Assembly (NCBI RefSeq): GCF_964204865.1
Contig: NC_135256.1
Location: forward strand, 14,198,001-14,262,000
DNA length: 64,000 nucleotides
Reading direction: 5' to 3'
Source of the DNA: Styela clava
Taxonomy: Eukaryota
Part shown: piece by piece, positions 1,206-25,776 of the stretch
Layout: every line of letters starts with the position of its first letter
Position numbering within the stretch: the first letter of the stretch is position 1
Notes under the pieces: model-generated
What the model was told of the DNA's origin: nothing
Seen by the model: the letters and a program-made list of their open reading frames with translations, nothing else
Databases searched by the model: none
Position numbers and translations under genes: made by a program

Positions 1206-6694
<5,489 letters not shown>

Positions 6695-8644
6695 TCAGTG
6701 AAGTTTTTCGTTATTTGATAATGTCCATACGTTTTCTGGACTTTTTCGTGATAGTTCAAGTGTCGTCTTCAGATGCGACTGCTTTTGGAATAGTTAACGT
6801 TGTTGGAGCAGGCCTACTCTGTACACAATATTGTTTTTTTATCTAGATTTCTATCTCTGCTAGTTCTTCTAAAATATTTCTTTACCAAATCAGCTATATT
6901 CCGAACAACTATAACTAGAGCAGCACAATTTTCGGCATGTTTTATATCTATTCCCTAGCGACAACATCATGCCGCTAGACCGCTATTTTACCGGAAATGT
7001 AAAACGTGTCAGAGCGGGTATCTAATATATATATGAACTGTCTATATAACCGAGAATTACGACGTTGCGAAATCAATACTTTGTCTTTATCTTACTTCAT
7101 AACCTGTGACACAGTACTGATTCCAAATATGCTTATCATTAGCATGCACTTTCGAATTTAGATTTCTAAATGAGAAGTCCTATTTCTTTCCTATAGTATT
7201 CTTCCCGACGAATTTTAATTAAACCGACAAGAGGCCATCAAGTATTTTTGTCTCTTTTTATACGCCATTCCACGACTGACGACTTACGTTACTAAATTGC
7301 CCCGGGGCAGTTATGTATTTTCTCTTTGCAACGTGTGTCTCGTGGAATCCTATGAGTCGGGCGACCTCGAGGCGTGTCACCTGATGATCAACTTATATTA
7401 TGTTATTTTTAAATTAGAGTATAGTTTGTCTCACCGGGTTTAGTAAATCGGATTAGGTAAATACACCAATGTCCAGGGCCGACATCCCGCCCTAGGCTCT
7501 TCAACACTGACCTCCTAAGAATTCATTATGACGTCACAACAGACTTACACACTAAGTAAAACGCATCCTAATAGCATAAATAAATTGTAATACGGAATTT
7601 CAGTTACAGGCAAGATACGTACGCGAATCACCCACGCCATCAAAAAACCGACGTCATGCTACCAGTTTCTAGTCGCGAGGGGTCCCGTTAGAGATAAACA
7701 AAACATTAATGATAAACAGAGAAGCTGGTGAGAAATCAGGCTCCAGTTCCGGAACCACGTATGTAAGAACTCTGACTCCTGCTCCAGTTTCGAAGATTCA
7801 CAACTTTACCTTGACGCTGAGCTCCTGCTCCATATTCATGTTTTTTTAGTATGAATACCTTGAGGCATCAGCCCAAATTTTACAATGAGCCTCTGAAGTT
7901 TTAAATATACAAATTTAACTTCATATTTAATTAAATAAGTTTAAAAAATATAAGCTGAAGAGGATAGTTTTCATGAAAATTCGGTGATTGGGAGTTGGAG
8001 CCACTTAAATTTTTAATAGCTCCGACACTATCTATTATGGTAAGGCTAGAACTAAATCATCCCTAACAATATGTATCGGGCCCATGGCTGAGGCTCTTCT
8101 GACCAATTTTTATTGATGATATAAACGGTCTATGATAAAAATATCCGAAATGTAAAAAATATAATAAATCATTAGATACGTTGTTGCTCAAATAAATCAG
8201 TATAGCTATATATCGGTATTTTCATATTTTTTTTCAAGTAACAAATGCATTGTTACGGTAAAACTGTTCAAATATTTAAATTATCATATTCTGTTTTTAA
8301 TGTCAAATGAGAAAGTGTTTCAAATCTGAAACAGTCATTTATTTGACCGTGTTTAATTCTCATCCTTTTAATCGGTGAATGATTGAGACAAGAATTATGA
8401 ACCAGATCAAGAAAATATCAGTTTTATAAAATTTTCTCAAAAGTCTTATTCGGAAATTTTGCGATTGAAAAACAACCAAAAAAAGGAATAATAGTTTAAA
8501 CTTGAAAACCGAGTTCCTCAAGCCGCTTAAGGCACCTAGGCTTCATCCTATCTCGCCTATTGGTAAATCCGACCTTGTCGTTATCGCTCTGTTTTCAACG
8601 TCACGTAATAACATAAGGACAGAAATAGTTACCAATAATATAAT

Positions 8645-8928
8645 ACGAGAGAGACCGAAGACTTATCGATCGTAAGTTAGGGGATCCCCCAAACCAGCGC
8701 TCTTACTCCATAGTGATACCTTGTGTCCGATTACTAATTAATTAATAACTCGCTAATTATACGACATAATTCATCCAAAATCAATAGGCTTCTGGTCCAA
8801 CATATGATGAATGCACATGTAAAATCTGGAGCAGATTCAATCTCGCTTTCGTGAGATATCGCGTGCATCTAACAGACAGACAGACAAATACCTATCAACA
8901 TACTTACCGATTAAAATCGATAAGTAAT
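8645..8928 (+). mobile_element. HINE/DINE-1-like element, copy 3
   Basis: Colinear, high-identity match to 467-763, including the subterminal palindrome, CAGA repeat and 3' hairpin. Confidence 0.7.
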
Positions 8929-9672
8929 AAAGGCCAAATGCACCAAATGGGAAGGTATGGGTGGTTTCGTTTTCGGTAAATATTTACTTTTGTTTGCTTG
9001 CCTATTGTTTCACTACACTGATAGGTAATAAAATGTTGGTATCGTCGCGTTGTAAGTCAAATCAAATATACAGCTTATTAGCAATTCAGAAAATATGAGG
9101 CTCCCTATATATATAACCCCATATATTAATACTTCATATGCTCTTGACTGCAAACTGTATTCATATGGATAACAAATAGACAAACGCATAAAATGGACCT
9201 ATATGGATCGTTTTATTATTATGTTCTTCTTGGTATTTTTATCGTTATGAAAAAATCGTTTTTCTCTTCAACTACACGACTAATTGCTTTGAAATTTTCA
9301 GTATGATTAAAGATTATATTTTCTCGCTAGAAAGCTATTACTTTTTTGTGTCCATATATTTGAGCATAGCTTTCTTGTTCATATGATAATACCTCATGAC
9401 ATACATCTCAATTGCTATCGGGGGAATTAGCCAGATCCAACGTTTTGGCGTAGCAATTGCCGTCATACTATGATCACGATTCAATGAACAATTCAATGAA
9501 TTGAACATTCTGTCTGATTGACACACAAAATTATACTCCGTTACGAAAGGTCTAGTTACAAATGGCGCAATACACCGCGTGGCCAAATCAAGTCGTGCAC
9601 TGAAATTGCTGAAATGTAATCCTTGAAAATAATATATATCGTTGTAATAGTCTTTCCAATTGATTCGCAAAA

Positions 9673-9678
9673 TTTATT
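9673..9678 (-). terminator. Candidate polyadenylation signal of the MAp44-like gene
   Basis: AATAAA on the minus strand about 150 nt downstream of the TAG at 9830-9832. Confidence 0.5.
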
Positions 9679-9829
9679 TCGGTGAGAATAAAGTACAGAA
9701 CTCATCAATTAAATGCAATGAATGCTGATTAAATGAAAGTCATTCTAATACAATAGTTGTTTGTACAATAGTTGTAGCCGATGTTATGTATACTGAATCA
9801 TGAAATGCAGAATGGTCCCATAATGGTCA

Positions 9830-12800
9830 CTATTTGTGTGGGATGCAGGTAGGAATATCGTCGTCAAAGGTTCCATCTTTCAGACATGTGACTTTATGAA
9901 CGCCTAACATTTCGTAGTTATTTTCACATTCAAAAACAACCACAGAATCAAACGGTAGGCGTCCGTTTTCCGCTCCAAATGTTTCCACAACCCGCCCATG
10001 TTCTGGTTCAACAGGAAGATCACAGTAGATACCTTCAATAAAAATTGTAAAAAGAATTATTCTTTCTCGTTCTATGTAGAAATATTTCCTTTCTAAGTTA
10101 CAAAAATTATATTGAGCACGAAACGACCATTTGAAGTGATATTGCATCAAGTTTAAGTGATGCCTTTGGAATATTCCTATACTCTATGCCAGGGGTCGGG
10201 AACCCATGTCTCGCGAGCCATATATAGCTCATTTAGTGAGAGCCTATGGTTCCCAGAAAAATCTAATATTCCAAGGTCAAGCTTACTATTGTTACGAGAT
10301 TTCAAACTCTTTTATAGCAAAATTTGGCAGGAAATTTGCCAATACGTTTAAAAACACGCGCCCAGCGCACGTCTCTGTTATGTGGGAGAATTACCAGATA
10401 GGCATTGTGACACAACTAGGGGATTCTGGAACATATTTTGTGACATAACAAAGCGATAGAGTAGTGGAGCAATAGAGAAAAGCTTTTCGTCCGTTTGTAC
10501 GTACTGGTTACTCAACTATTTTCACTAAAGGGCTGTACACAAAACTTAAAAATTACCGGGGTCCGGTCATTCCAAAAATATATTTTGGCTATGCAAACAA
10601 AATTTCAAATGTATCGTTTGACGAAATACGCTACGAGAGCAATACTCATATCGCGATTCGATGTCAGTATGACTGGGCTTCACTTGTGTAGCTGAGCGCC
10701 GACTTTGCTGAAAAGATATGAAATATTCGTCCCCATAGCACCCGTAATAATATATATATTCAAGACTGAAAATTTAGAACACATTAGTTGCGGAAAATAA
10801 CTATTTTTTATTAGGAAAAACCACAACGTCACAAAAATGTTAGCAAAACGATGCGGTCGCTAAAAGTTCAGTTTTTACGCCCCATTCACATCTTTCTGAT
10901 TAGTTAATGCTAAGGAGGTAAACAAGTGAGTCGATGCTCTGAAAAATGATATTGCTATGACAATTTTTTCTTCCTCAGTGGATTAGCAGAAAACGCATTA
11001 CATTACGATTTCGAAAGGAAAAGAAACGATGTATTCGAAGTCGAGAAGCAGCTGCGGTCCAAATTTAATTCTCGGAAGGTCCGGATTCGGACCGCGGTCC
11101 GCCAGTTGAGTAGCCGTGGGTTACAGTATTTGTCATATTTATATCAGACTAGCAAAGCTAGTTTTTAAAATACTACGGAGATGCCTGAACGAAAGAAGGG
11201 AGATAAGTATTGTAGATTTCAACTTGTGCTGCATGTGAGCAGCCGTTTAAGGCCCGCAGTGACAACATGCAGCGTCAGAAGTCACATTAAATGTATATTG
11301 ACATTGTATATGTGTTGACCTTTGAGTAAAAATTTCAGGCCTGATTAAGTGAAGAAACTCTATATGGCTCGCACGGAAATGCAATTGAAAATATGTATTT
11401 TTCATGGCTCTCTTGACCAAAGAGGTTTCCGACCCCTGCTCTATGCCTTATATTCTATTTAGTCTATGACGTAATAAAGTCAGCACATCCTGTTATCAAG
11501 TCTAGCCCGCCTCATAGAACATTCGAGAAATAGTCGACGTGGGAGACGCTTGTGTTGGAATTCAATTTACTTTCCTCTAAGTCTAATACATATTGTGTGA
11601 GCAATTGAAGTCTTTGTTACTTATAATTCAATATCAGATTTATTCTTGATGTGTCTTTTGCATTAAAGGAGGTAAGACAAAAACTATGGATGCATAGTTT
11701 TGCTTTATTTCTAATCGTTGCGAAATTTGAACCTACGTCGGTATCCAGAGTGAATTGCCGCCGAGTCCAGTATATTCTCCGTTATTGCATTATTACACTG
11801 ATTTTTAATTGGCCCGTGAGTTATGTTTCATGAATTTTCTTGACTTTATTTACACAAAGCGTCTCTCTCATATCTCAAATAATCTGTTAAAACGCTATGC
11901 ATTTGGTGTAGGTTGGCGATAAAGCGACGCGATGAGAGTGTAAGCAAAAATTTTTTTTAATTTTTGAAATTATCATTCCGACAGCGTGTGTATCTGTCAA
12001 AAGGCACCATTTGCCGATGAAAACAGTATTTTGATAAAAAATAAAAATGTTACTAAAAAGATTAATTTAAAACAAGTTCTTTTTTAAAAACTGGCCGTTT
12101 TTTAGAAATAAAAAAAAACATACGTGTGTGAACGCCCCGCCCCGTACTTGACGAATTTAACTCTGAAACAATTCATTTTTTCTCAGGGCAAGTCGTGAGA
12201 AAGTACTAACACCAACCGATTTTAATACCGACTTCCCACCTGCTCGCAGACCTTTTTCAAGTTTTGTTGAAAATTTCGACTCCGGTCACAGATTTTTAGA
12301 CTAAAACCCCGGACGAGGTGAAATTAAAAATAGGACTCCGGTTACGAATCCGCAGCCTATACTATTGATATTTTCATTTGAAATTTATTATAATATATAC
12401 AAATGCCTCCTCTCTCAATTTCAATAAAATATATTCGAGCATATTACCTCTGCTTGCGTACGTAAGTTTAAATCCTTTCATCTCAGTGACCTTATCCGAA
12501 TGAAATTGTATTTTGACAATGTTTCCTGTAGACACAATTGAATTTGGTGCTGTCGGTCCACAATGTCCATTTGATAACCCCGATCCGACATCAACCTGAC
12601 AAAAATGTAAAAGAAATCTATCAGTCCAATTAATCAGTAATTTATTTTATCACCAATGCCTAAAATACGTAACGTCATATTAAATGTAGAATGAAATGAG
12701 AATAGCATTTCAGGGTGCAGTAAGAGGCGAAAAAGTCAATACTGGTTATCGAGCAGATACATCCTATAGTACATGAAAAAAATAAATACAAACAGGAAAC

Positions 12801-15800
12801 ATGAATTAAATATACGTATAGATACAAAATATTCACACAAATATATTTATACACTAGATACGTTTGAGTATTCGGAAGCGGTCTGGTAAATCCAGAGACG
12901 CTCGTTTATGTAAAAGAGTGACTCCAAGCACCATCAAGCGAGGTAACCACAGGAACGACTCAGTTGAGACACTGGCAACAGATTTGTGCCTAATGTAGAA
13001 TTAATATATTTATTTATTCGTTAAGAAGAGATCATAAAACATGAATCTGGTATTGTGGCTTGGTGATTGAGTCAATGCTGAGTAATTGTATTGTTGATAT
13101 AAATGAGGGATTTGACATTAGAAGCAATATCCGGTTTAGTTAGGACGTAATTTTCTAAAACCTGGTACTTCAGACCCTGAGTTACCGAAAAAATTGTGAC
13201 TCCGTGATTGTGATTATAAAGAAATGGAATAGGAACATAAGAATGAAACTGCTCTCTGATATCCTGCACAAAACAGGCTCACAGATCTATCGTCAAACTA
13301 CGAACCTCTGTCGAACTTTGACCTACAGCCTACAGGTAGCAAATGAGAATCAGGTCATGAGGAGTAGGTATATCTGTGATAGCGTTAAGTATCATTCCGA
13401 ACAATTCCGCAATTTTTTTTATAAATAAAAGATCGTTTTGTCGTTCCCGCAAGCTAAAGCCGTTAAGCCTCCGTTACCTCATTCCACCGATATAAACATG
13501 AATCGCCAGTCAAAAACATTCCGGTATGGCTAACCAAATATCGAATCATGCGAGTGAATTACAAGATAAAAGTAAACATTGAAAAAACTACTATCCCGTT
13601 TAGTGAAGAGAATTTGCTGGTAGCGCATGGTAGGAGTTTCTTACTCTATAATAACAAAAATTATCATACCTTGATCCAGTCATAAGGGCAGACTATCGCG
13701 TTGTAATCTTCAATGTCATACTCTTCATCGAAAGATAATTCGATGACTTGGCCGACCTCCGTCTAAACAAATTTATAGTAATATTGATAAAAAAGTTTTT
13801 ATGATAATGGACACGCTTTCTGTTTTTATTAAAGATTTTCTCTGTCACGAAAAAAATTTGATACAAGTATTCGTCCTTTTTCTGAGCCAACTCGAAATTT
13901 TGGTCAATGCCGGAATTCCCCACTGCCTGGCAGTGTTTTGGTAAAGTAATGAAGAAAGAAAACAAGTCACGGGGCTTTTGTGATTGCCTTAAAAACATTA
14001 TCGTTTTGTTACATTATCGGAAAATTTAGGAGTAGCGTTTATGATATTAAAGTTAATATTGTGACTATAGAAACCTAAGGCCCACATATTGAAAAGGCGT
14101 CCTATGTCATTCAGTATAGAAAAAAAACTTTTTTACCACTCGATATTCGCCGAAAATTTCGTAAATTGGGACTCTGGTAAACAGTTTAGTGCAAACCAAT
14201 AAAATCTTGTAAGATTCCAGCAACGATAACGAACCTCAATAGTCCAGTCACAATCAGTCAACTTCGGATAAGCGTCCGGATAACCAGGGCTTGTAATTAC
14301 ACCGGAAGAACTGCTGAGTCGAATTCCAGAACACTTTCCTGTTAACGATTGAAGAATTCGTGAATATCACATACAAAATCGTGTAAAAATAATGATAAAT
14401 GAATATGCATGCTAATCTGGGACTTGTATAGTCTTTGTTTACGCACTACACAGCCTAAATGAAATAACTGTTAAAATTCATAGTGATTACCTCGGTGTTT
14501 TAGGCATACAAGTACAACGTGTAGATGAAGACTATTCATTAAAGATTTCTTACAATAATATCACGGACATTTTAGTATTTGACTTGATGCAAAGTATTTT
14601 TCTCTGCATTGATAATGGAACAATACTGCAAAATATTATTTTAAGGGACAAGACTCGTAATTACATATTTCACGTACCCACACAAGTGTATCCGTCTTCA
14701 TGAAGTTCGTAACCATCCTTGCAGTTGCAGGTATATCCACCCATGTAGTTGATGCAATGATGATCACATTTCCCTATTTCCTCTGGAAACTCTGATTCAT
14801 CGTATTCTACTTCGAGTTCTTGGCATTCATCTCGATCTATAACATAAGGCCAAATAATAAACAAAATTTCAAGGTCAGTTTTATTGTAAGGCACGGCTTA
14901 TACTTTATCTCGACCGCCTATAGGCCTGGAACAGTATATATATTCACTGTTTAGTATGTATTTTGAAATCTACGCCGACAAAATAGCAAAGGTATCAGCG
15001 GCGAAAGTCGATGTGGACAAAAGATTATCCCAATCACAAAACAAAGTCAAATCACAAATTCGACAATTCTGCGCTAATAAATGGGATCAACATTTTATAC
15101 ACAGTGACCAAGCGTTTCATTACAAGACAATTTTCCCCTCAATTGAAGACAGCATCAAGAATTCCACTTGGTCGCCACGAATAATGGACAAAATTTTATT
15201 TCGACTTCAGACGGGACATTGCCGTTTAAATGGGCACCTCCATAAAATAGGATGCCATAATAATGGACTTTGCGATTTTTGTAATGATCCAGAGACAGTA
15301 GAACATTTTCTAATGAACTGTCGTGCATATAGAAATGAAAGACGCATACTAAAGATGAAATAACGCGATTATGGCATTAAATTTCAACTCAAAGCTATCT
15401 TACGCGACCCTAGCATTTTCCCTGCTCTTGTTGATTTTGTGAAATCTACCAAGAGAGTACTATAGGCATATACAAAATTTTGATTTAAATTGTCTGGCGC
15501 AAAAGACTCAAATTGTTTAAAGCGCCATATATTACCATACCACACACACACACACGGGTATTCTAACCCGGTATGTTATAGATTAAACAGTAACCTGCAA
15601 TAAATACTTATTAATGATCCAATTGGACTAAAATATATATATATATGAATGATTTCCAACCATGATGGATTATTCACTATTACTCGTAATCATCTATCAA
15701 AGAGAACACCGATCGAGTGAGTGCAAACTCTTAGTAATGCATAGCGTAAAATACTTCCCGCATATAATGCGTAAGTTCCAATATAAAGGGTGTCCAAAAA

Positions 15801-17371
15801 AACATCGATTTTATAGTAATAACAATTGAGAATTTTTTGTCTTTGTTTATAGATAGTTCTATTTATATACGGTATAATTTTTGAATGTGTTAATGCTCCA
15901 CGCGGAGTTTTTAATGTTGCTTATGTCAGTTTCAGAATTAAACTAAATATCACGATCGTGAGTCATTAGAAGCGAACAATTTTACAACATTGCCCTATTT
16001 TTTACAGACCTTCTGCTTTGTATACAGCCCGGAATCCCATTAACGGAGATATATCAGGCAGATTGTTGGAATAATCTGTTTCAAATTTTAAAGTCATCAC
16101 ATTTCCGGTAGTTGTGAACACGGTTGAATATAAAGCAGGAGCATCGTCGGGGTAGTAAGTTGGATTTCCGCACAGTCTTTTGCTTGTTATATTCGAATCC
16201 AATTCGCCGTCAAATATCTGAATAAAAAAAAAAACGATTTGCCCGAATACAAAAATAAGCCGCCAATAAAAAAATGTAACATCGCAGATTTATTAATGTG
16301 CGAGTCGCCACTAAACACTCGATTGTACACTTAAAAGATTATATATACTTACTAGGCTAACCATTTAAAATACACTTTGAATTGGGTGTTTTGGGCTATA
16401 GTCGTGGTCGAATACGTCAGATGACATGATTATTTACGTATAATTGGTTGGAAAAACCCGTATTGGTCGTATCGCTCCCTCCTGTCCATACCAAAACAAT
16501 TTTATTGCTGTTGCTATTTTATTGATGACTGTATTTTTTGGTTGACGAAATAGTAAAATCTCTCTCTCTCTCTCGCTAGTGATCAAGAAACTTTCAAGTG
16601 AAAGGACAGCACTGGAGTGGCGAACCATACGCTAATGAACACTTTTCCCAGCCCGCTAAAACTAGTATTTTATTATGATATGATTAATCGATTATATAGA
16701 TCAGCAGTAAATTCTTCAGATTACATAAGAGTAACTGCGGCATTTTGCCTCACATACATCCTATCATAAAATGGCTTTGATTGAATGAGAGGTGTTTCTA
16801 TGTAGAGACTGTTTGTAGTAAACTCAGTCACCATTTCTTTTACATCCAAAGTAAAAAATACACGAGATAAATAAAACTTTCACCTGTACATGGTCAAAAG
16901 GGCATAGAGTATCCTGACTATATGAGTCTTCAATATCAAACGCAGTGAAAATCAAGGCCACTTTTAATCCTTTTGACACTGTGATCGTCCAGGTTTGATT
17001 CAAATTATTGTCATAATATGAGGGAAAATGGTTGCTAGAGAACACGCCATATGTTCCATGTAAGTTGAATGGATCACACAGGCCAGACTTTACGAACGAT
17101 AATAATACAACCAGTAGAATATATCTAAAAACAATGACATTTTTCTGTTCGTTCTGAGCTGTGCATTTTTCAGCACAGGATGAATATATATATACATAGA
17201 TATTTCCGGCTAACCTACTGTTCATTGCAAAATAATGAAAAGAATTTCCAACAATTCGTAAGTAACCTGCATATATAAATATATAGACTAGTGACTGCTT
17301 GCAATTTGAAAAACTATTATTTTGTTATACACACTTATCACTATTATTGGTTCTACTTACTTGGACAGCAT
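9830..17371 (-). CDS. Secreted MASP/C1r/C1s-family protein, signal peptide-CUB1-EGF(Ca)-CUB2-CCP1-stop (MAp44-like, no serine protease domain), 8 exons, 388 aa
   Basis: Exons (minus) 17371-17361, 17124-16884, 16217-16010, 14836-14678, 14338-14235, 13762-13670, 12595-12448, 10032-9830; GT-AG, phases consistent, 1167 nt. Signal MLSKYILLVVLLSFVKSGLC; CUB1 (FDIEDSY..CPFDHVQ..LCG..FETDYSN..GFRAVY); EGF DRDEC..CDHHCINYMGGYTCNCKDGYELHEDGYTC; CUB2 (SGVITSPGYPDAYPKLTDCDWTI..CPYDWIK..FHSD..GFKLTY); CCP (CDLPVEPEHG..FECENNY..VTCLKDGTFDDDIPTC), then IPHK-TAG-TGA. Confidence 0.9.
10190..11438. mobile_element. Non-autonomous hAT (Buster/Charlie-like) element, probably with a nested second hAT (~10504-11118)
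   Basis: TIRs CAGGGGTCGGGAACC / GGTTTCCGACCCCTG; perfect 8-bp TSD CTCTATGC at 10182-10189 and 11439-11446. An internal pair GGTTACTCAACT (~10506) / AGTTGAGTAGCC (~11104) suggests a nested element. Confidence 0.88.
14956..15555 (+). mobile_element. 5'-truncated non-LTR retrotransposon (LINE) 3' end, disrupted ORF2 C-terminus
   Basis: ORF encodes ADKIAK (RNase H C-terminal-like) and LFRLQTGHCRLNGHLHKIG..CDFCNDPETVEHFLMNC (CCHC zinc finger typical of I/R1-group LINEs). The frame continues after TAA at 15361 as RDYGIKFQLKAILRDPSIFPALVDFVKSTKRVL*, so the stop looks premature. Ends in a TACCA/(CA)n tail. Lies antisense in intron 3 of the MAp44-like gene. Confidence 0.85.
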
Positions 17372-18609
17372 AGTTCCCTGTCTTCATTTGAAAGTCGTAT
17401 GAAGGAATAACATGGTTGAAACGAACTCACTGAATAACATTTGTTGTTATTTGTTTTGCTCTCGTAGTTAGTACTGGGAATTGGGTCAGTATTAATCCTG
17501 TTAAATTTACGTGTAAGACCAAACTCGAATTAACATGATATCGACTGTCGTGGAACCAGTACATATGTAAGTTATTTCAGTTAGGAATATGGATGGATTA
17601 CAAACATGCAATAAACGCACGCTGGTTTATACCCACGGGGATTGCGTATTGAAATGGTGATTCATAGACTCAATTTTCGGTTTCGTATTGGTTTTGATTT
17701 GTCTATATCAGTTGAAAAATAATATTATATATATCACTATGTAATAATTTCCGAAAACATGTAAGCAGTCAATTCGGAGAGTTCGTCAACATCTACTTTT
17801 ACCAGGAAAGTATCGGGAATTTGCACTAGTCCCAAGAATATTGTTTCGCATTGCTCCATTATCTGTACTAAATTGCGCCAAGTGTTGTTTATCTTGCTGG
17901 ATAAAAGAGAAACCAATACCACACCGTAAACGATTACAACTCATCTTTTATCTTACTGAAACAATTTTATTTAATTAATGTAAATAAAATGGAACACACC
18001 AAAGCATCACAGTGTAAAGTGAAAAGAATTCCAAAGAAATCGGCCGACTTGGTTGGTGACAAGTCATCATTACCCAAATCGAAATGGACTCTTGCTTTAA
18101 AAAAGGCATTTCAGTTAAGTCGAGTTTGAACTCTCTTATCGAGTCACGTGTGCTAAAACCATAAAATAGGTACGATCTGGGCTAGTGGATCACGATTACC
18201 TAATTCGGTTGGCTCAAGTTATATTTCTTGAGTTTCCTGTTTAATCAAATTTTCAATAATTTAATATTTTATTGATGAAATTTAGTAGGTAAACTCCAAT
18301 TGAATCTTTTAAATTAAAAAAAACGTAGCGTCGTAACTTACAATTGGCCAAAAGTAGACTGGAGCATCTTGTTCAATAATGTATGTCGCTCTTGAAATCA
18401 TCTGTAGACAATTACAACAATAATGAAATCCGATTGGAATTCAGGTTCAAATTTTTTAATTTAAAAAATAGGAAAGAACGAGTCCTGTTTATAGTCTCGA
18501 ATGCTATACTAACGCCAACAATTACATAGACTCAACTATCTTATGTGTAAGATTTTTTCTTGTCTTCCGAACTCATATCCACCGATACCGATAAATTGAC
18601 ACTCCGGAT

Positions 18610-21521: not shown

Positions 21522-24103
<2,582 letters not shown>

Positions 24104-24174: not shown

Positions 24175-25776
24175 TCACTTAACGTATTTATCCATGAACT
24201 TTTTGTGAAACTCTGATCTCAATGTATCATTTATAAATCGTTTTTGTGTTTTGTCGGGTTCGCCTCTAGCACAGTTCTTGAATACGACATCGTCATCCCA
24301 TCTAAATGAATGTTTGTAAAATAACACTTTAATATTTTCTCATTACTTAAAATATATTTGCAGCAAGTTAATTAATCGTGTTCAGTGTGAGAGGAAGCAA
24401 CAGTAACAAAAAGGTTGATTTGTAAAATATGATTGTATATGAGCATGCTTCTATTCTGATAACCCCATGTATTCACAATCAGCACTCACCTCCTCTTGAC
24501 AGCAAAATTTGATTCACCACGTTTCACGTTCATTAGAGGATTTCCACTCAAAATATTTTCTGTTCGTATCCGCGCTTCTTCCTCTTTCTTTTCTAGTTCC
24601 TGGAAAGCAATAATATTCAGGATTAGCTTGTGATCTGAAACTTTAATAACTACCGGTACGTATGTATATACCGGTAATCTAAAAAAAATTGATTCCTTCT
24701 GTTTTTGTAGACCCCTTATCAGTGATTATACATCTCAGTACATTGTATAATATTTTAATCACAAACCTTCTTTGCTGATTCTTCTGCCCTTTCCTTCTTG
24801 ATTCTATTCAATTCTGCTAGTAATTCAGCGGTATCGTCTTCCGAATCTGAATCACTGTCGCTATCCTGAACAGTAGAGCAAATATTACCATTAATATTAT
24901 TAGAATTTCTGAAATTGTCATGTGCCCTGTAGATATTTGAGATTTGGCTCCAGGTCTGACAAGATGAACATCTCAGAATCATAGACCATGCCAGATCAAG
25001 ATAACGAGCGTCTATTTAACGATAATCTCAAGAACCCATATGAAAAGATAGGCCATATATTTGAGATAGGTCCAGTAAGGAAAATCAACTGACTGTATCT
25101 GCTGGATCATCGGCATCAAGATTAGCCGCTGGAATTTGATTTAATCTTTGTCGTTTGTGTGAGTCCCGGGATGTTCTGTCTGACGACCTCTTTTCATTTC
25201 TCTCTCTATAGCTTCTGCTTTCTCTGTCATCCAACTCGCGTCTGAAATCACGAGCGTGGATGTCTTCAGGTGCATTCTGTGAAAATAAAAGTTAATGAAG
25301 TTTGGCAATGGTGGCGTTAAATGTGGCAGTAATCAAATATGACATTATTTGTTAACGTAAATAATAATAGCCAACCTCTTCACGGGCTCCAGAACGCCAA
25401 AAGTCTGAGAACCCTGGTCTAGTTAACAAACTGCAATTTCTGATTATTTCATGAAGCTACAACACCTGTTTGGCGATGGGGTCATAAGGCCATGTGCAGA
25501 AATAGATGTAGTTAACATTATTTTGGATTCAAATGTTTTATCTCGCAGAGATTGAATTATGAAACAGTTTATTGATGAATATATATTTAGATAGCGGAAG
25601 AATGACAAGTTGCAAGACATAGAGTTAGTCACCTGTCCTTCTTGGCGATATTTTAACTTAGTATGGCTTGGTAAATCTCTGCTTGAATATTGTTTTGATA
25701 ATTTTCCCAAATCACTTTCTCCTCTACTAGATCCTCCTCTAGCAGTATCAAATGTTGGTCTTGCAGCAGTTGTCAT
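24175..25776 (-). CDS. CWC15: Spliceosome-associated protein CWC15, 5 coding exons, 220 aa
   Basis: Exons (minus) 25776-25633, 25276-25094, 24865-24767, 24599-24490, 24301-24175 (663 nt). [100 protein letters not shown]. Confidence 0.97.

What the first reader, a model, noticed from the sequence alone, without database searches (positions are those of the whole stretch)
9830..17371. Stand-alone gene for a protease-less MASP (MAp44 architecture): candidate dedicated lectin-pathway inhibitor
Seen: signal-CUB-EGF-CUB-CCP followed at once by IPHK-TAG-TGA inside the CCP exon. There is no GT donor after the last Cys, an AATAAA lies 150 nt downstream, and I found no CCP2 or trypsin exons in the 3.2 kb before the next gene. 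Established: MASP/C1r/C1s are CUB-EGF-CUB-CCP-CCP-serine protease. Human MAp44 has exactly CUB-EGF-CUB-CCP plus a short tail, arises by alternative splicing of MASP1 through a separate terminal exon, and competes with MASPs for MBL/ficolins. Inference: this lineage encodes the same decoy as a separate truncated paralogue, a convergent complement regulator. The acidic CUB motifs (DIED, YD/FD, TD/SD) that bind Ca2+ and collagen stems appear retained. MAp44-like proteins may already be reported from other tunicates or fish, so novelty needs checking.
Basis: partly seen in the sequence, partly recalled or inferred. Interest (0 to 1): 0.8.

Follow-up and report, generated by a model that had tools for sequence, protein, structure and literature searches.

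The report
Protease-less MASP gene of sea squirts
This sea-squirt (Styela clava) gene makes a secreted protein that is the front four domains of a complement-activating protease (MASP) with no protease part. It is expressed, it is kept in at least three orders of sea squirts, and it arose separately from the similar human regulator MAp44, but its function has not been tested.

Summary
On the minus strand, eight GT-AG exons (17371 to 9833) encode a 388-aa signal-CUB1-EGF-CUB2-CCP protein. It ends ...PTCIPHK-TAG-TGA inside the CCP exon, with AATAAA about 150 nt downstream.

- **Transcript end:** spliced RNA contigs from two runs join CUB2 to CCP and run unspliced through the stop to 9694 and 9673. 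No joint leaves the CCP exon.
- **No hidden exons:** no second CCP or protease exon lies in the window or the 30 kb downstream.
- **Orthologues:** proteins of 389-392 aa ending 2-4 residues after the same cysteine exist in Ciona intestinalis, Clavelina lepadiformis and unnamed transcripts.
- **Origin:** in a per-exon partitioned tree they form one clade (99.8/100). It is sister to the four full-length S. clava MASPs 3.1 Mb away and lies apart from vertebrate MASP1/MAp44, so the origin is independent.
- **Binding sites:** the best solved-structure match is human MAp44 (4AQB, E 6e-64). The Ca2+/collagen-binding acidic residues of both CUB domains are conserved.

The inhibitor role is inference only. 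A fish MAP promotes complement, and the family has lost an accessory tyrosine in CUB1. This is a new variant of a known kind, of moderate interest. This scan has not noted this family on other DNA.

The parts
17361..17371 (-). Coding exon 1: ATG (17371-17369), codes MLS and two bases of K4; donor GTAAGT
   Evidence: matches residues 1-3 of P0156
16884..17124 (-). Coding exon 2: rest of the signal peptide (cleavage probably after ...SGLC, by eye) and first half of CUB1 with Ca-site Glu (DIED) and Asp (FDH)
   Evidence: P0156 residues 5-84
16010..16217 (-). Coding exon 3: second half of CUB1 (TDYSN Ca-site Asp/Ser)
   Evidence: P0156 85-153
14678..14836 (-). Coding exon 4: Ca-binding EGF module with the ascidian-specific insertion of about 9-11 residues
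   Evidence: P0156 155-206
14235..14338 (-). Coding exon 5: CUB2, first part
   Evidence: P0156 208-241
13670..13762 (-). Coding exon 6: CUB2, middle part (YDIED Glu, CPYDW Tyr-Asp)
   Evidence: P0156 242-272. Its 3' end is seen in RNA contig X1 as the loose end beyond 12597
12448..12595 (-). Coding exon 7: CUB2, last part (HSD Asp)
   Evidence: covered by RNA contigs X1, X2 and X4
9833..10032 (-). Coding exon 8: the single CCP/Sushi domain, ending ...PTCIPHK
   Evidence: joined to exon 7 in RNA contigs (joint 12445->10029)
9827..9832 (-). Tandem stop codons TAG TGA inside the CCP exon
   Evidence: RNA contigs run through them unspliced
9673..9826 (-). 3' UTR with AATAAA at 9678-9673. RNA contigs end at 9694 (X1) and 9673 (X2). 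A 29-nt indel at 9787 and 5 SNPs separate the RNA samples from the assembly

Best explanation
This is a dedicated gene for a secreted, non-catalytic MASP paralogue of 388 aa (signal peptide, CUB1, Ca-binding EGF, CUB2, one CCP, four-residue tail).

Shown here:
- The gene is complete, spliced and expressed, and its mRNA ends after the CCP exon.
- No protease exons exist nearby.
- The same truncated protein is kept in Stolidobranchia (Styela), Phlebobranchia (Ciona) and Aplousobranchia (Clavelina).
- The family is sister to the full-length S. clava MASPs and unrelated by descent to the vertebrate MASP1 splice form MAp44.
- The Ca2+-coordinating Glu/Asp/Asp of both CUB domains, all cysteines and the EGF Ca-site are conserved.

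Inferred:
- Like the CUB1-EGF-CUB2 module of MASPs, C1r/C1s and MAp44, it dimerises.
- It docks in a Ca2+-dependent way on a lysine in the collagen stalks of ascidian defence collagens (ficolins, collectin-like and C1q-like lectins).
- Having no protease, it occupies MASP sites and so modulates lectin-pathway activation of C3. Dampening is the most likely direction.
For: - **Domains and exon model:**
- **Transcript structure:** the spliced joint 12445->10029 is seen only in the RNA runs. Contigs run through the stop to 9694/9673, with depths of 985 and 189.
- **No CCP2 or protease exon in 94 kb:**
- **Identity to a RefSeq protein:** the product equals the RefSeq S. clava protein P0156, which lies on a contig of exactly the length of C8.
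- **Orthologues:** Ciona P0165 (389 aa, ends CEVF), Clavelina P0182 (391 aa, CEVF), P0106/P0164 (CVGF) and P0157 (CLPK). They are 39-61% identical to P0156 and none has a trypsin Pfam domain.
- **Tree:** the truncated family is a clade at 99.8/100 whose internal order matches ascidian orders. Its branch lengths are no longer than those of the full-length paralogues.
- **Shared EGF insertion:** found only in this family and the S. clava MASPs.
- **Structure matches:** the best PDB sequence hit is MAp44 4AQB (E 5.7e-64, covering residues 25-385). The best fold hit is also 4AQB, and the modelled CUB2 fits MASP-1 CUB2 at 2.3 A.
- **Binding residues:** Glu/Asp/Asp of CUB1 and CUB2 are invariant across the family.
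- **Polymorphism:** 1 difference in 348 coding nt laid against 5 SNPs plus an indel in about 140 nt of 3' UTR.
- **MAp44 precedent:** MAp44 displaces MASPs from recognition molecules (PMC10855846).
- **Possible partners:** unchecked notes of this scan report many S. clava defence collagens with a Lys docking motif.
Against: - No binding or activity data exist for any member.
- The Tyr before the CUB1 Asp (human MASP-1 Tyr56, a collagen-contact residue from my memory of Teillet 2008 and Gingras 2011) is F/Q/A/L/T/N in this family, whereas S. clava MASPs A, C and D keep it.
- The Ser two residues after the CUB2 Asp (Ser265 equivalent) is Val in Styela and varies in the others. Docking may therefore be weaker or aimed at other partners.
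- The CCP consensus Trp is replaced by F/M/L in every member.
- A teleost MAP promoted rather than inhibited complement.
- The reads laid were assembled contigs, which drop rare isoforms and cannot fix the poly(A) site.
- No Ciona or Clavelina full-length MASP was in the tree.
Confidence: 0.55

Rival explanations
1. It is a non-catalytic adaptor that promotes activation. It docks on recognition lectins and recruits or positions full-length MASPs, as reported for tongue-sole CsMAP34, instead of competing with them.
For: CsMAP34 enhanced serum haemolytic and bactericidal activity, and CsMASP1 bound the lectins only in its presence (PMC5180248). The architecture and Ca-sites fit this reading as well as they fit a decoy.
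Against: CsMAP34 is a single report on recombinant proteins. Human MAp44 and MAp19 are regarded as inhibitory. Heterodimerising with MASPs that are only about 40% identical in CUB1-EGF is not assured.
Confidence: 0.2
2. It is a secreted CUB-EGF-CUB-CCP protein with a role outside complement, such as matrix, tunic or developmental signalling through other CUB ligands. It would have been recruited from a MASP duplicate.
For: CUB-EGF-CUB modules of BMP-1/tolloid also bind C1q and MBL, and CUB domains serve many ligands (PMC5717261). The family-specific loss of the CUB1 Tyr and the CCP Trp hints at changed partners. MASPs are implicated in ascidian metamorphosis (PMC5465252).
Against: Its nearest relatives are all MASPs, and both Ca-sites are kept intact over the whole ascidian radiation.
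Confidence: 0.17
3. It is the short isoform of a longer MASP gene whose CCP2 and protease exons lie far away or were missed.
For: Vertebrate MAp44 and MAp19 arise this way. Contigs cannot exclude rare isoforms.
Against: The stop lies inside the CCP exon with no in-phase donor. No CCP2 or protease exon lies in 94 kb, and the next gene on the same strand is an unrelated epimerase. RefSeq models in two species and transcript-sized contigs of 1.2-1.6 kb in others all end at the same place.
Confidence: 0.04
4. It is a decaying truncated duplicate with no function.
For: None beyond the truncation itself.
Against: The frame is open and all splice sites are intact. RNA contig depth is high. Orthologues in three ascidian orders have conserved cysteines, Ca-sites and stop position. 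Branches are not lengthened.
Confidence: 0.02

Closest known systems
Human MAp44 / MAP-1 (PDB 4AQB), non-catalytic product of MASP1
   Same: Same domain set: CUB1-EGF-CUB2-CCP1 plus a short tail, secreted, no protease. It is the best sequence and fold match. The Ca2+/Lys-binding Glu/Asp/Asp are conserved in both CUBs.
   Different: MAp44 is an alternative splice form that uses a separate terminal exon coding 17 residues. Here a separate gene puts the stop inside the CCP exon and leaves a 4-residue tail. The origin is independent, since the gene sits in the tunicate MASP clade. It has an EGF insertion, and the CUB1 Tyr and CCP Trp are replaced.
MAp19 / sMAP (MASP2 product) and teleost MAPs (CsMAP34; carp MRP, the latter from my memory)
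   Same: They are non-catalytic N-terminal MASP fragments that bind recognition lectins.
   Different: MAp19 has only CUB1-EGF. The fish proteins are isoforms of MASP genes. CsMAP34 was reported to promote, not inhibit.
Full-length ascidian MASPs (four S. clava genes at C8:17.31-17.37 Mb)
   Same: They are the sister clade. They share the EGF insertion, the exon layout and the intron phases, and are 33-58% identical per exon.
   Different: They carry CCP2 and a serine-protease domain. This gene has neither.

Membership tests
MASP/C1r/C1s family | N-terminal CUB1-EGF(Ca)-CUB2 interaction module | tested here: met
   Pfam. PDB alignment to MASP-1/3, MASP-2, C1r and C1s at E 1e-31 to 1e-64.
MASP/C1r/C1s family | Two CCP modules followed by a chymotrypsin-fold serine protease domain | tested here: not met
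   There is one CCP only, with the stop 4 codons after its last Cys. No CCP2 or trypsin exon in 94 kb. Transcripts end there.
MASP/C1r/C1s family | Descent from a MASP gene (phylogenetic nesting) | tested here: met
   It is sister to the S. clava MASPs A-D inside a tunicate clade with 99.9/100 support, and it shares their EGF insertion.
MAp44 (MAP-1) | CUB1-EGF-CUB2-CCP1 plus a short C-terminal tail, no protease | tested here: met
MAp44 (MAP-1) | Produced from the MASP1 gene by alternative splicing to a dedicated terminal exon | tested here: not met
   It is a separate gene 3.1 Mb from the MASP cluster, and the stop is inside the CCP exon.
MAp44 (MAP-1) | Orthology to vertebrate MASP1 | tested here: not met
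   Vertebrate MASP1, including an amphibian MAp44-like isoform, forms a different clade.
MAp44 (MAP-1) | Ca2+-dependent binding to collagen stalks of MBL and ficolins through acidic CUB residues | tested here: inconclusive
   The equivalents of E49, D57, D102, S104, E216, Y225, D226 and D263 are conserved. The equivalents of Y56 and S265 are not. Binding itself cannot be tested with these tools.
MAp44 (MAP-1) | Inhibits lectin-pathway activation by displacing MASPs | not testable with these tools
   This needs recombinant protein and ascidian plasma assays.

The most novel reading that the evidence does not exclude
Ascidians evolved their own dedicated non-catalytic MASP (a 'MAp') by gene duplication and truncation before their orders split, independently of the vertebrate splice-derived MAp44 and MAp19. 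It regulates, most likely restrains, MASP loading on the large set of lysine-motif defence collagens in these animals. If so, a decoy regulator of the lectin pathway has arisen repeatedly in chordates and can be studied genetically in Ciona.
Probability: 0.4. Interest if true: 0.6.

Novelty: new variant of a known kind. Interest (0 to 1): 0.45.

Why it matters
Non-catalytic MASP fragments are known regulators of the human lectin pathway, but their physiological role is still debated and they cannot be removed without touching the MASP genes that encode them. In sea squirts the same domain set sits in its own gene, conserved across the group. The Ciona orthologue could therefore be knocked out alone to ask what a MAp does. 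The gene also shows that public annotation ('serine protease 1-like') mislabels a protein with no protease domain. Finally, it gives a dated case of independent evolution of the MAp44 architecture.

Tried and rejected
- **Start codon.** I first took the in-frame ATG at 17225 as the start, which gave 418 aa and an oddly long N-region. P0156 and a perfect GTAAGT donor showed that the true first exon is at 17371-17361.
- **Whole-library HMMER search.** The search with exon 2 was swamped by multi-CUB proteins. It still gave the first orthologues, P0070 and P0106.
- **PDB searches with single exons.** CUB1b gave nothing, one search had a frame slip, and the CCP exon hit only generic CCP proteins.
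- **The look-up of encoding contigs.** The source organisms and DNA of P0070, P0106, P0157 and P0164 are therefore unknown, and no dN/dS could be computed.
- **Joined spliced model.** I did not search or fold a joined spliced model of my own. I used the database protein P0156 after checking exon by exon that it equals the window's exons. The tree used one alignment per exon as separate partitions, with no joined sequence.
- **AlphaFold model.** The model from a 4-row alignment was weak (pLDDT 67, pTM 0.39). Only its domain-level matches are used.
- **Literature.** No paper in the library holds Ciona + MASP + MAp44 or MAp19. The only two with ascidian + MAp44 are general lectin reviews. The library is partial, and Skjoedt 2010 and Azumi 2003 were not readable.
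- **Ciona tunic proteome.** The 'MASP1-like' protein found there is a 633-aa protein, not this one.
- **tRNA-derived SINE.** No tRNA was found in 6600-17500, so this was rejected for the intron and intergenic repeats.
Full report
**What is in the sequence**

The finding lies on the minus strand. Pfam recognises CUB, a Ca-binding EGF (FXa_inhibition, cEGF, EGF_CA), CUB and Sushi in successive minus-strand ORFs. I placed the exons from splice signals and reading frame. There are eight coding exons, all with GT-AG introns:

| Exon | Window coordinates | Content |
|---|---|---|
| 1 | 17371-17361 | ATG, MLS and two bases of K4 |
| 2 | 17124-16884 | rest of signal peptide, CUB1 first half |
| 3 | 16217-16010 | CUB1 second half |
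| 4 | 14836-14678 | EGF |
| 5 | 14338-14235 | CUB2 first part |
| 6 | 13762-13670 | CUB2 middle part |
| 7 | 12595-12448 | CUB2 last part |
| 8 | 10032-9833 | CCP |

- The exons total 1164 nt, or 388 codons.
- The CCP exon ends ...PTCIPHK, then TAG TGA.
- The only GT near the end overlaps the stops and would be out of phase.
- AATAAA sits at 9678-9673.
- The window has no N.

**Whether the transcript ends there**

One reads search found nine probable RNA runs holding 13-16% of the sampled words, which is the share expected for exons only. It also found DNA runs holding 70-88%.

I laid three of the RNA runs and one DNA run on 6601-12600:
- A 1025-nt contig of run X1 (depth 985) and a 458-nt contig of X2 (depth 189) join 12445 to 10029.
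- That joint skips 2415 nt with GT..AG ends on the minus strand. It is absent from the DNA run, so these runs really are RNA.
- Both contigs run colinear through the stop codons, to 9694 (X1) and 9673 (X2).
- X1's contig continues upstream into exon 6.
- No joint leaves the CCP exon.
- A third run (X4) has the same joint at depth 2.3.

These are assembled contigs, so rare isoforms and the exact poly(A) site remain open. The RNA samples differ from the assembly by 5 SNPs and a 29-nt indel in about 140 nt of 3' UTR. In the 348 coding nt laid they differ by one conservative change, Ser to Thr.

**Whether protease exons are hidden**

- The four closest paralogues lie in a cluster on the same chromosome, at C8:17.31-17.37 Mb, 3.1 Mb away. 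They carry protease exons with TAAHC and GDSGGP motifs.
- tblastn with every ORF of that cluster, and with the CCP2-protease parts of six full-length MASPs, was run against the window plus 30 kb downstream. It hits only the exons listed above, the single CCP exon and repeats.
- Downstream on the same strand is an unrelated NAD-dependent epimerase gene (6604 to 1209).
- Upstream lie a Rag-GTPase-like ORF on the plus strand and a CWC15-like ORF on the minus strand.

**Identity and relatives**

I searched exon by exon and did not search or fold a joined model of my own. A whole-library HMMER search with exon 2 gave two short CUB-EGF-CUB-CCP proteins. [quoted passage not shown] It lies on a contig of 24,301,187 bp, the length of the window's contig C8. 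Every exon translation is a consecutive piece of P0156. The genome is therefore Styela clava, and the gene is already in RefSeq under a name that wrongly implies a protease.

Profile searches then found further members:

| Protein | Source | Length | C-terminus |
|---|---|---|---|
| P0165 | Ciona intestinalis | 389 aa | ...PVCEVF |
| P0182 | Clavelina lepadiformis | 391 aa | ...PICEVF |
| P0106, P0164 | unnamed, on contigs of 1.3-1.6 kb (transcript-sized) | 391-392 aa | ...CVGF |
| P0157 | unnamed, on a 1264-nt contig | 328 aa (N-terminally cut) | ...PTCLPK |

- None has a trypsin Pfam domain.
- All stop 2-4 residues after the last CCP cysteine.
- They are 39-61% identical to the Styela protein.

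**Origin**

I built one alignment per exon. Each held the matching segments of database proteins and the unmodified exon translations of the four S. clava MASPs. I analysed them as linked partitions in IQ-TREE, with no joined sequence. Support values are SH-aLRT/UFBoot.

- The truncated proteins form one clade (99.8/100).
- That clade splits into Styela plus two unnamed sequences (98.3/100) and Ciona plus Clavelina plus two unnamed sequences (96.7/96). This matches the usual view of ascidian relationships.
- The clade is sister to S. clava MASPs A-D (96.4/99).
- All tunicate sequences form a clade (99.9/100), apart from vertebrate MASP1, MASP2 and C1s (96.8/96).
- An amphibian MAp44-like isoform nests with vertebrate MASP1.
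- An insertion of 9-11 residues between the first two EGF cysteines is shared only by the truncated family and the S. clava MASPs.
- Branch lengths in the truncated clade are no longer than in the full-length paralogues.

The architecture therefore arose by duplication and truncation of a tunicate MASP before the three ascidian orders diverged, independently of vertebrate MAp44. No full-length Ciona or Clavelina MASP was in the tree, so the order of events among tunicate MASPs is not settled.

**How it probably works**

- The best solved-structure match of P0156 is human MAp44 (4AQB, E 5.7e-64), aligned from residue 25 to the last cysteine. MASP-1/3, MASP-2, C1r and C1s CUB1-EGF-CUB2 follow.
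- A weak AlphaFold model (pLDDT 67) also hits 4AQB first. Its CUB2 fits MASP-1 CUB2 at 2.3 A.
- The alignments show conserved equivalents of human MASP-1 Glu49, Asp57, Asp102 and Ser104 in CUB1, and Glu216, Tyr225, Asp226 and Asp263 in CUB2, in every family member. The EGF Ca-site is conserved too.
- That these residues hold Ca2+ and clasp a stalk lysine is established knowledge. PMC5717261 gives the general statement, and the residue numbers are from my memory of Teillet 2008 and Gingras 2011.
- MAp44 is held to inhibit by displacing MASPs (PMC10855846).
- The N-terminus MLSKYILLVVLLSFVKSGLC, read by eye, looks like a signal peptide. Nothing suggests a membrane anchor.

The most likely mechanism is therefore a secreted dimer that docks on defence-collagen stalks and, lacking a protease, modulates MASP loading.

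**Cautions on the mechanism**

- The Tyr before the CUB1 Asp is lost in the whole truncated family, but S. clava MASPs A, C and D keep it.
- The Ser265 equivalent varies.
- The CCP consensus Trp is F/M/L in every member.
- A teleost MAP promoted complement activation (PMC5180248).
- Earlier notes of this scan report many S. clava defence collagens with a lysine docking motif. These are plausible partners, but I did not check them.

**Novelty**

- The gene is annotated in two species under a generic name.
- In the searchable library I found no paper that describes a protease-less MASP gene in tunicates.
- A tunicate immunity review lists MASPs and CCP-type regulators but nothing of this kind (PMC5465252).
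- The 'MASP1-like' protein of a Ciona tunic proteome is a 633-aa protein.
- The library is partial, so an earlier mention in subscription journals cannot be excluded.
- I class this as a new variant of a known kind, of moderate interest. The structural claims are firm. The regulatory role is untested.

Noticed in passing
window 8687-8907, 519-739 (direct, 90%), 2083-2225 (inverted, 86%): A very high-copy repeat. Summed contig depth is about 1,000,000 in the DNA run and 5,000-28,000 in the RNA runs, against about 45 for unique DNA. Further high-depth stretches lie at 9201-9400, 10201-10600 and 11001-11600, in the intergenic region and in the intron before the CCP exon. No tRNA-like part was found.
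   Followed up: partly
window 9787 (3' UTR): A 29-nt stretch present in the assembly and in the DNA run is absent from the RNA contigs of two studies. It lies in a short tandem duplication (acaactattgta...), so it is probably an indel polymorphism.
   Followed up: no
L035 (G000:C8:17325001-17335000), about 17325900-17329900, plus strand: One of the four clustered S. clava MASP genes ('B') has Lys and Asn where the CUB1 Ca-site Glu and Asp should be (FNLKE..., YNFF). It also lacks the F-x-SDYSN stretch of CUB1, although it has all other exons. It may be a divergent or decaying copy. I did not check whether it has protease exons.
   Followed up: partly
CCP exon, window 9833-10032, and orthologues P0157, P0165, P0182, P0106, P0164: The otherwise near-invariant Trp of CCP/Sushi modules (CLxDGxW) is Phe, Met or Leu in every member of the truncated family. 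All full-length MASPs compared keep Trp.
   Followed up: partly
EGF exon, window 14678-14836, and the S. clava MASP cluster (L033-L039): An acidic insertion of 9-11 residues between the first and second EGF cysteines is shared by the truncated family and all four S. clava MASPs. It is absent from vertebrate, echinoderm and cnidarian MASPs. It may serve as a tunicate MASP marker.
   Followed up: partly
window 22382-22711 (+) and 24755-24982 (-): The upstream neighbours look like a Rag-type small GTPase exon and a CWC15-like exon, unrelated to the finding.
   Followed up: no
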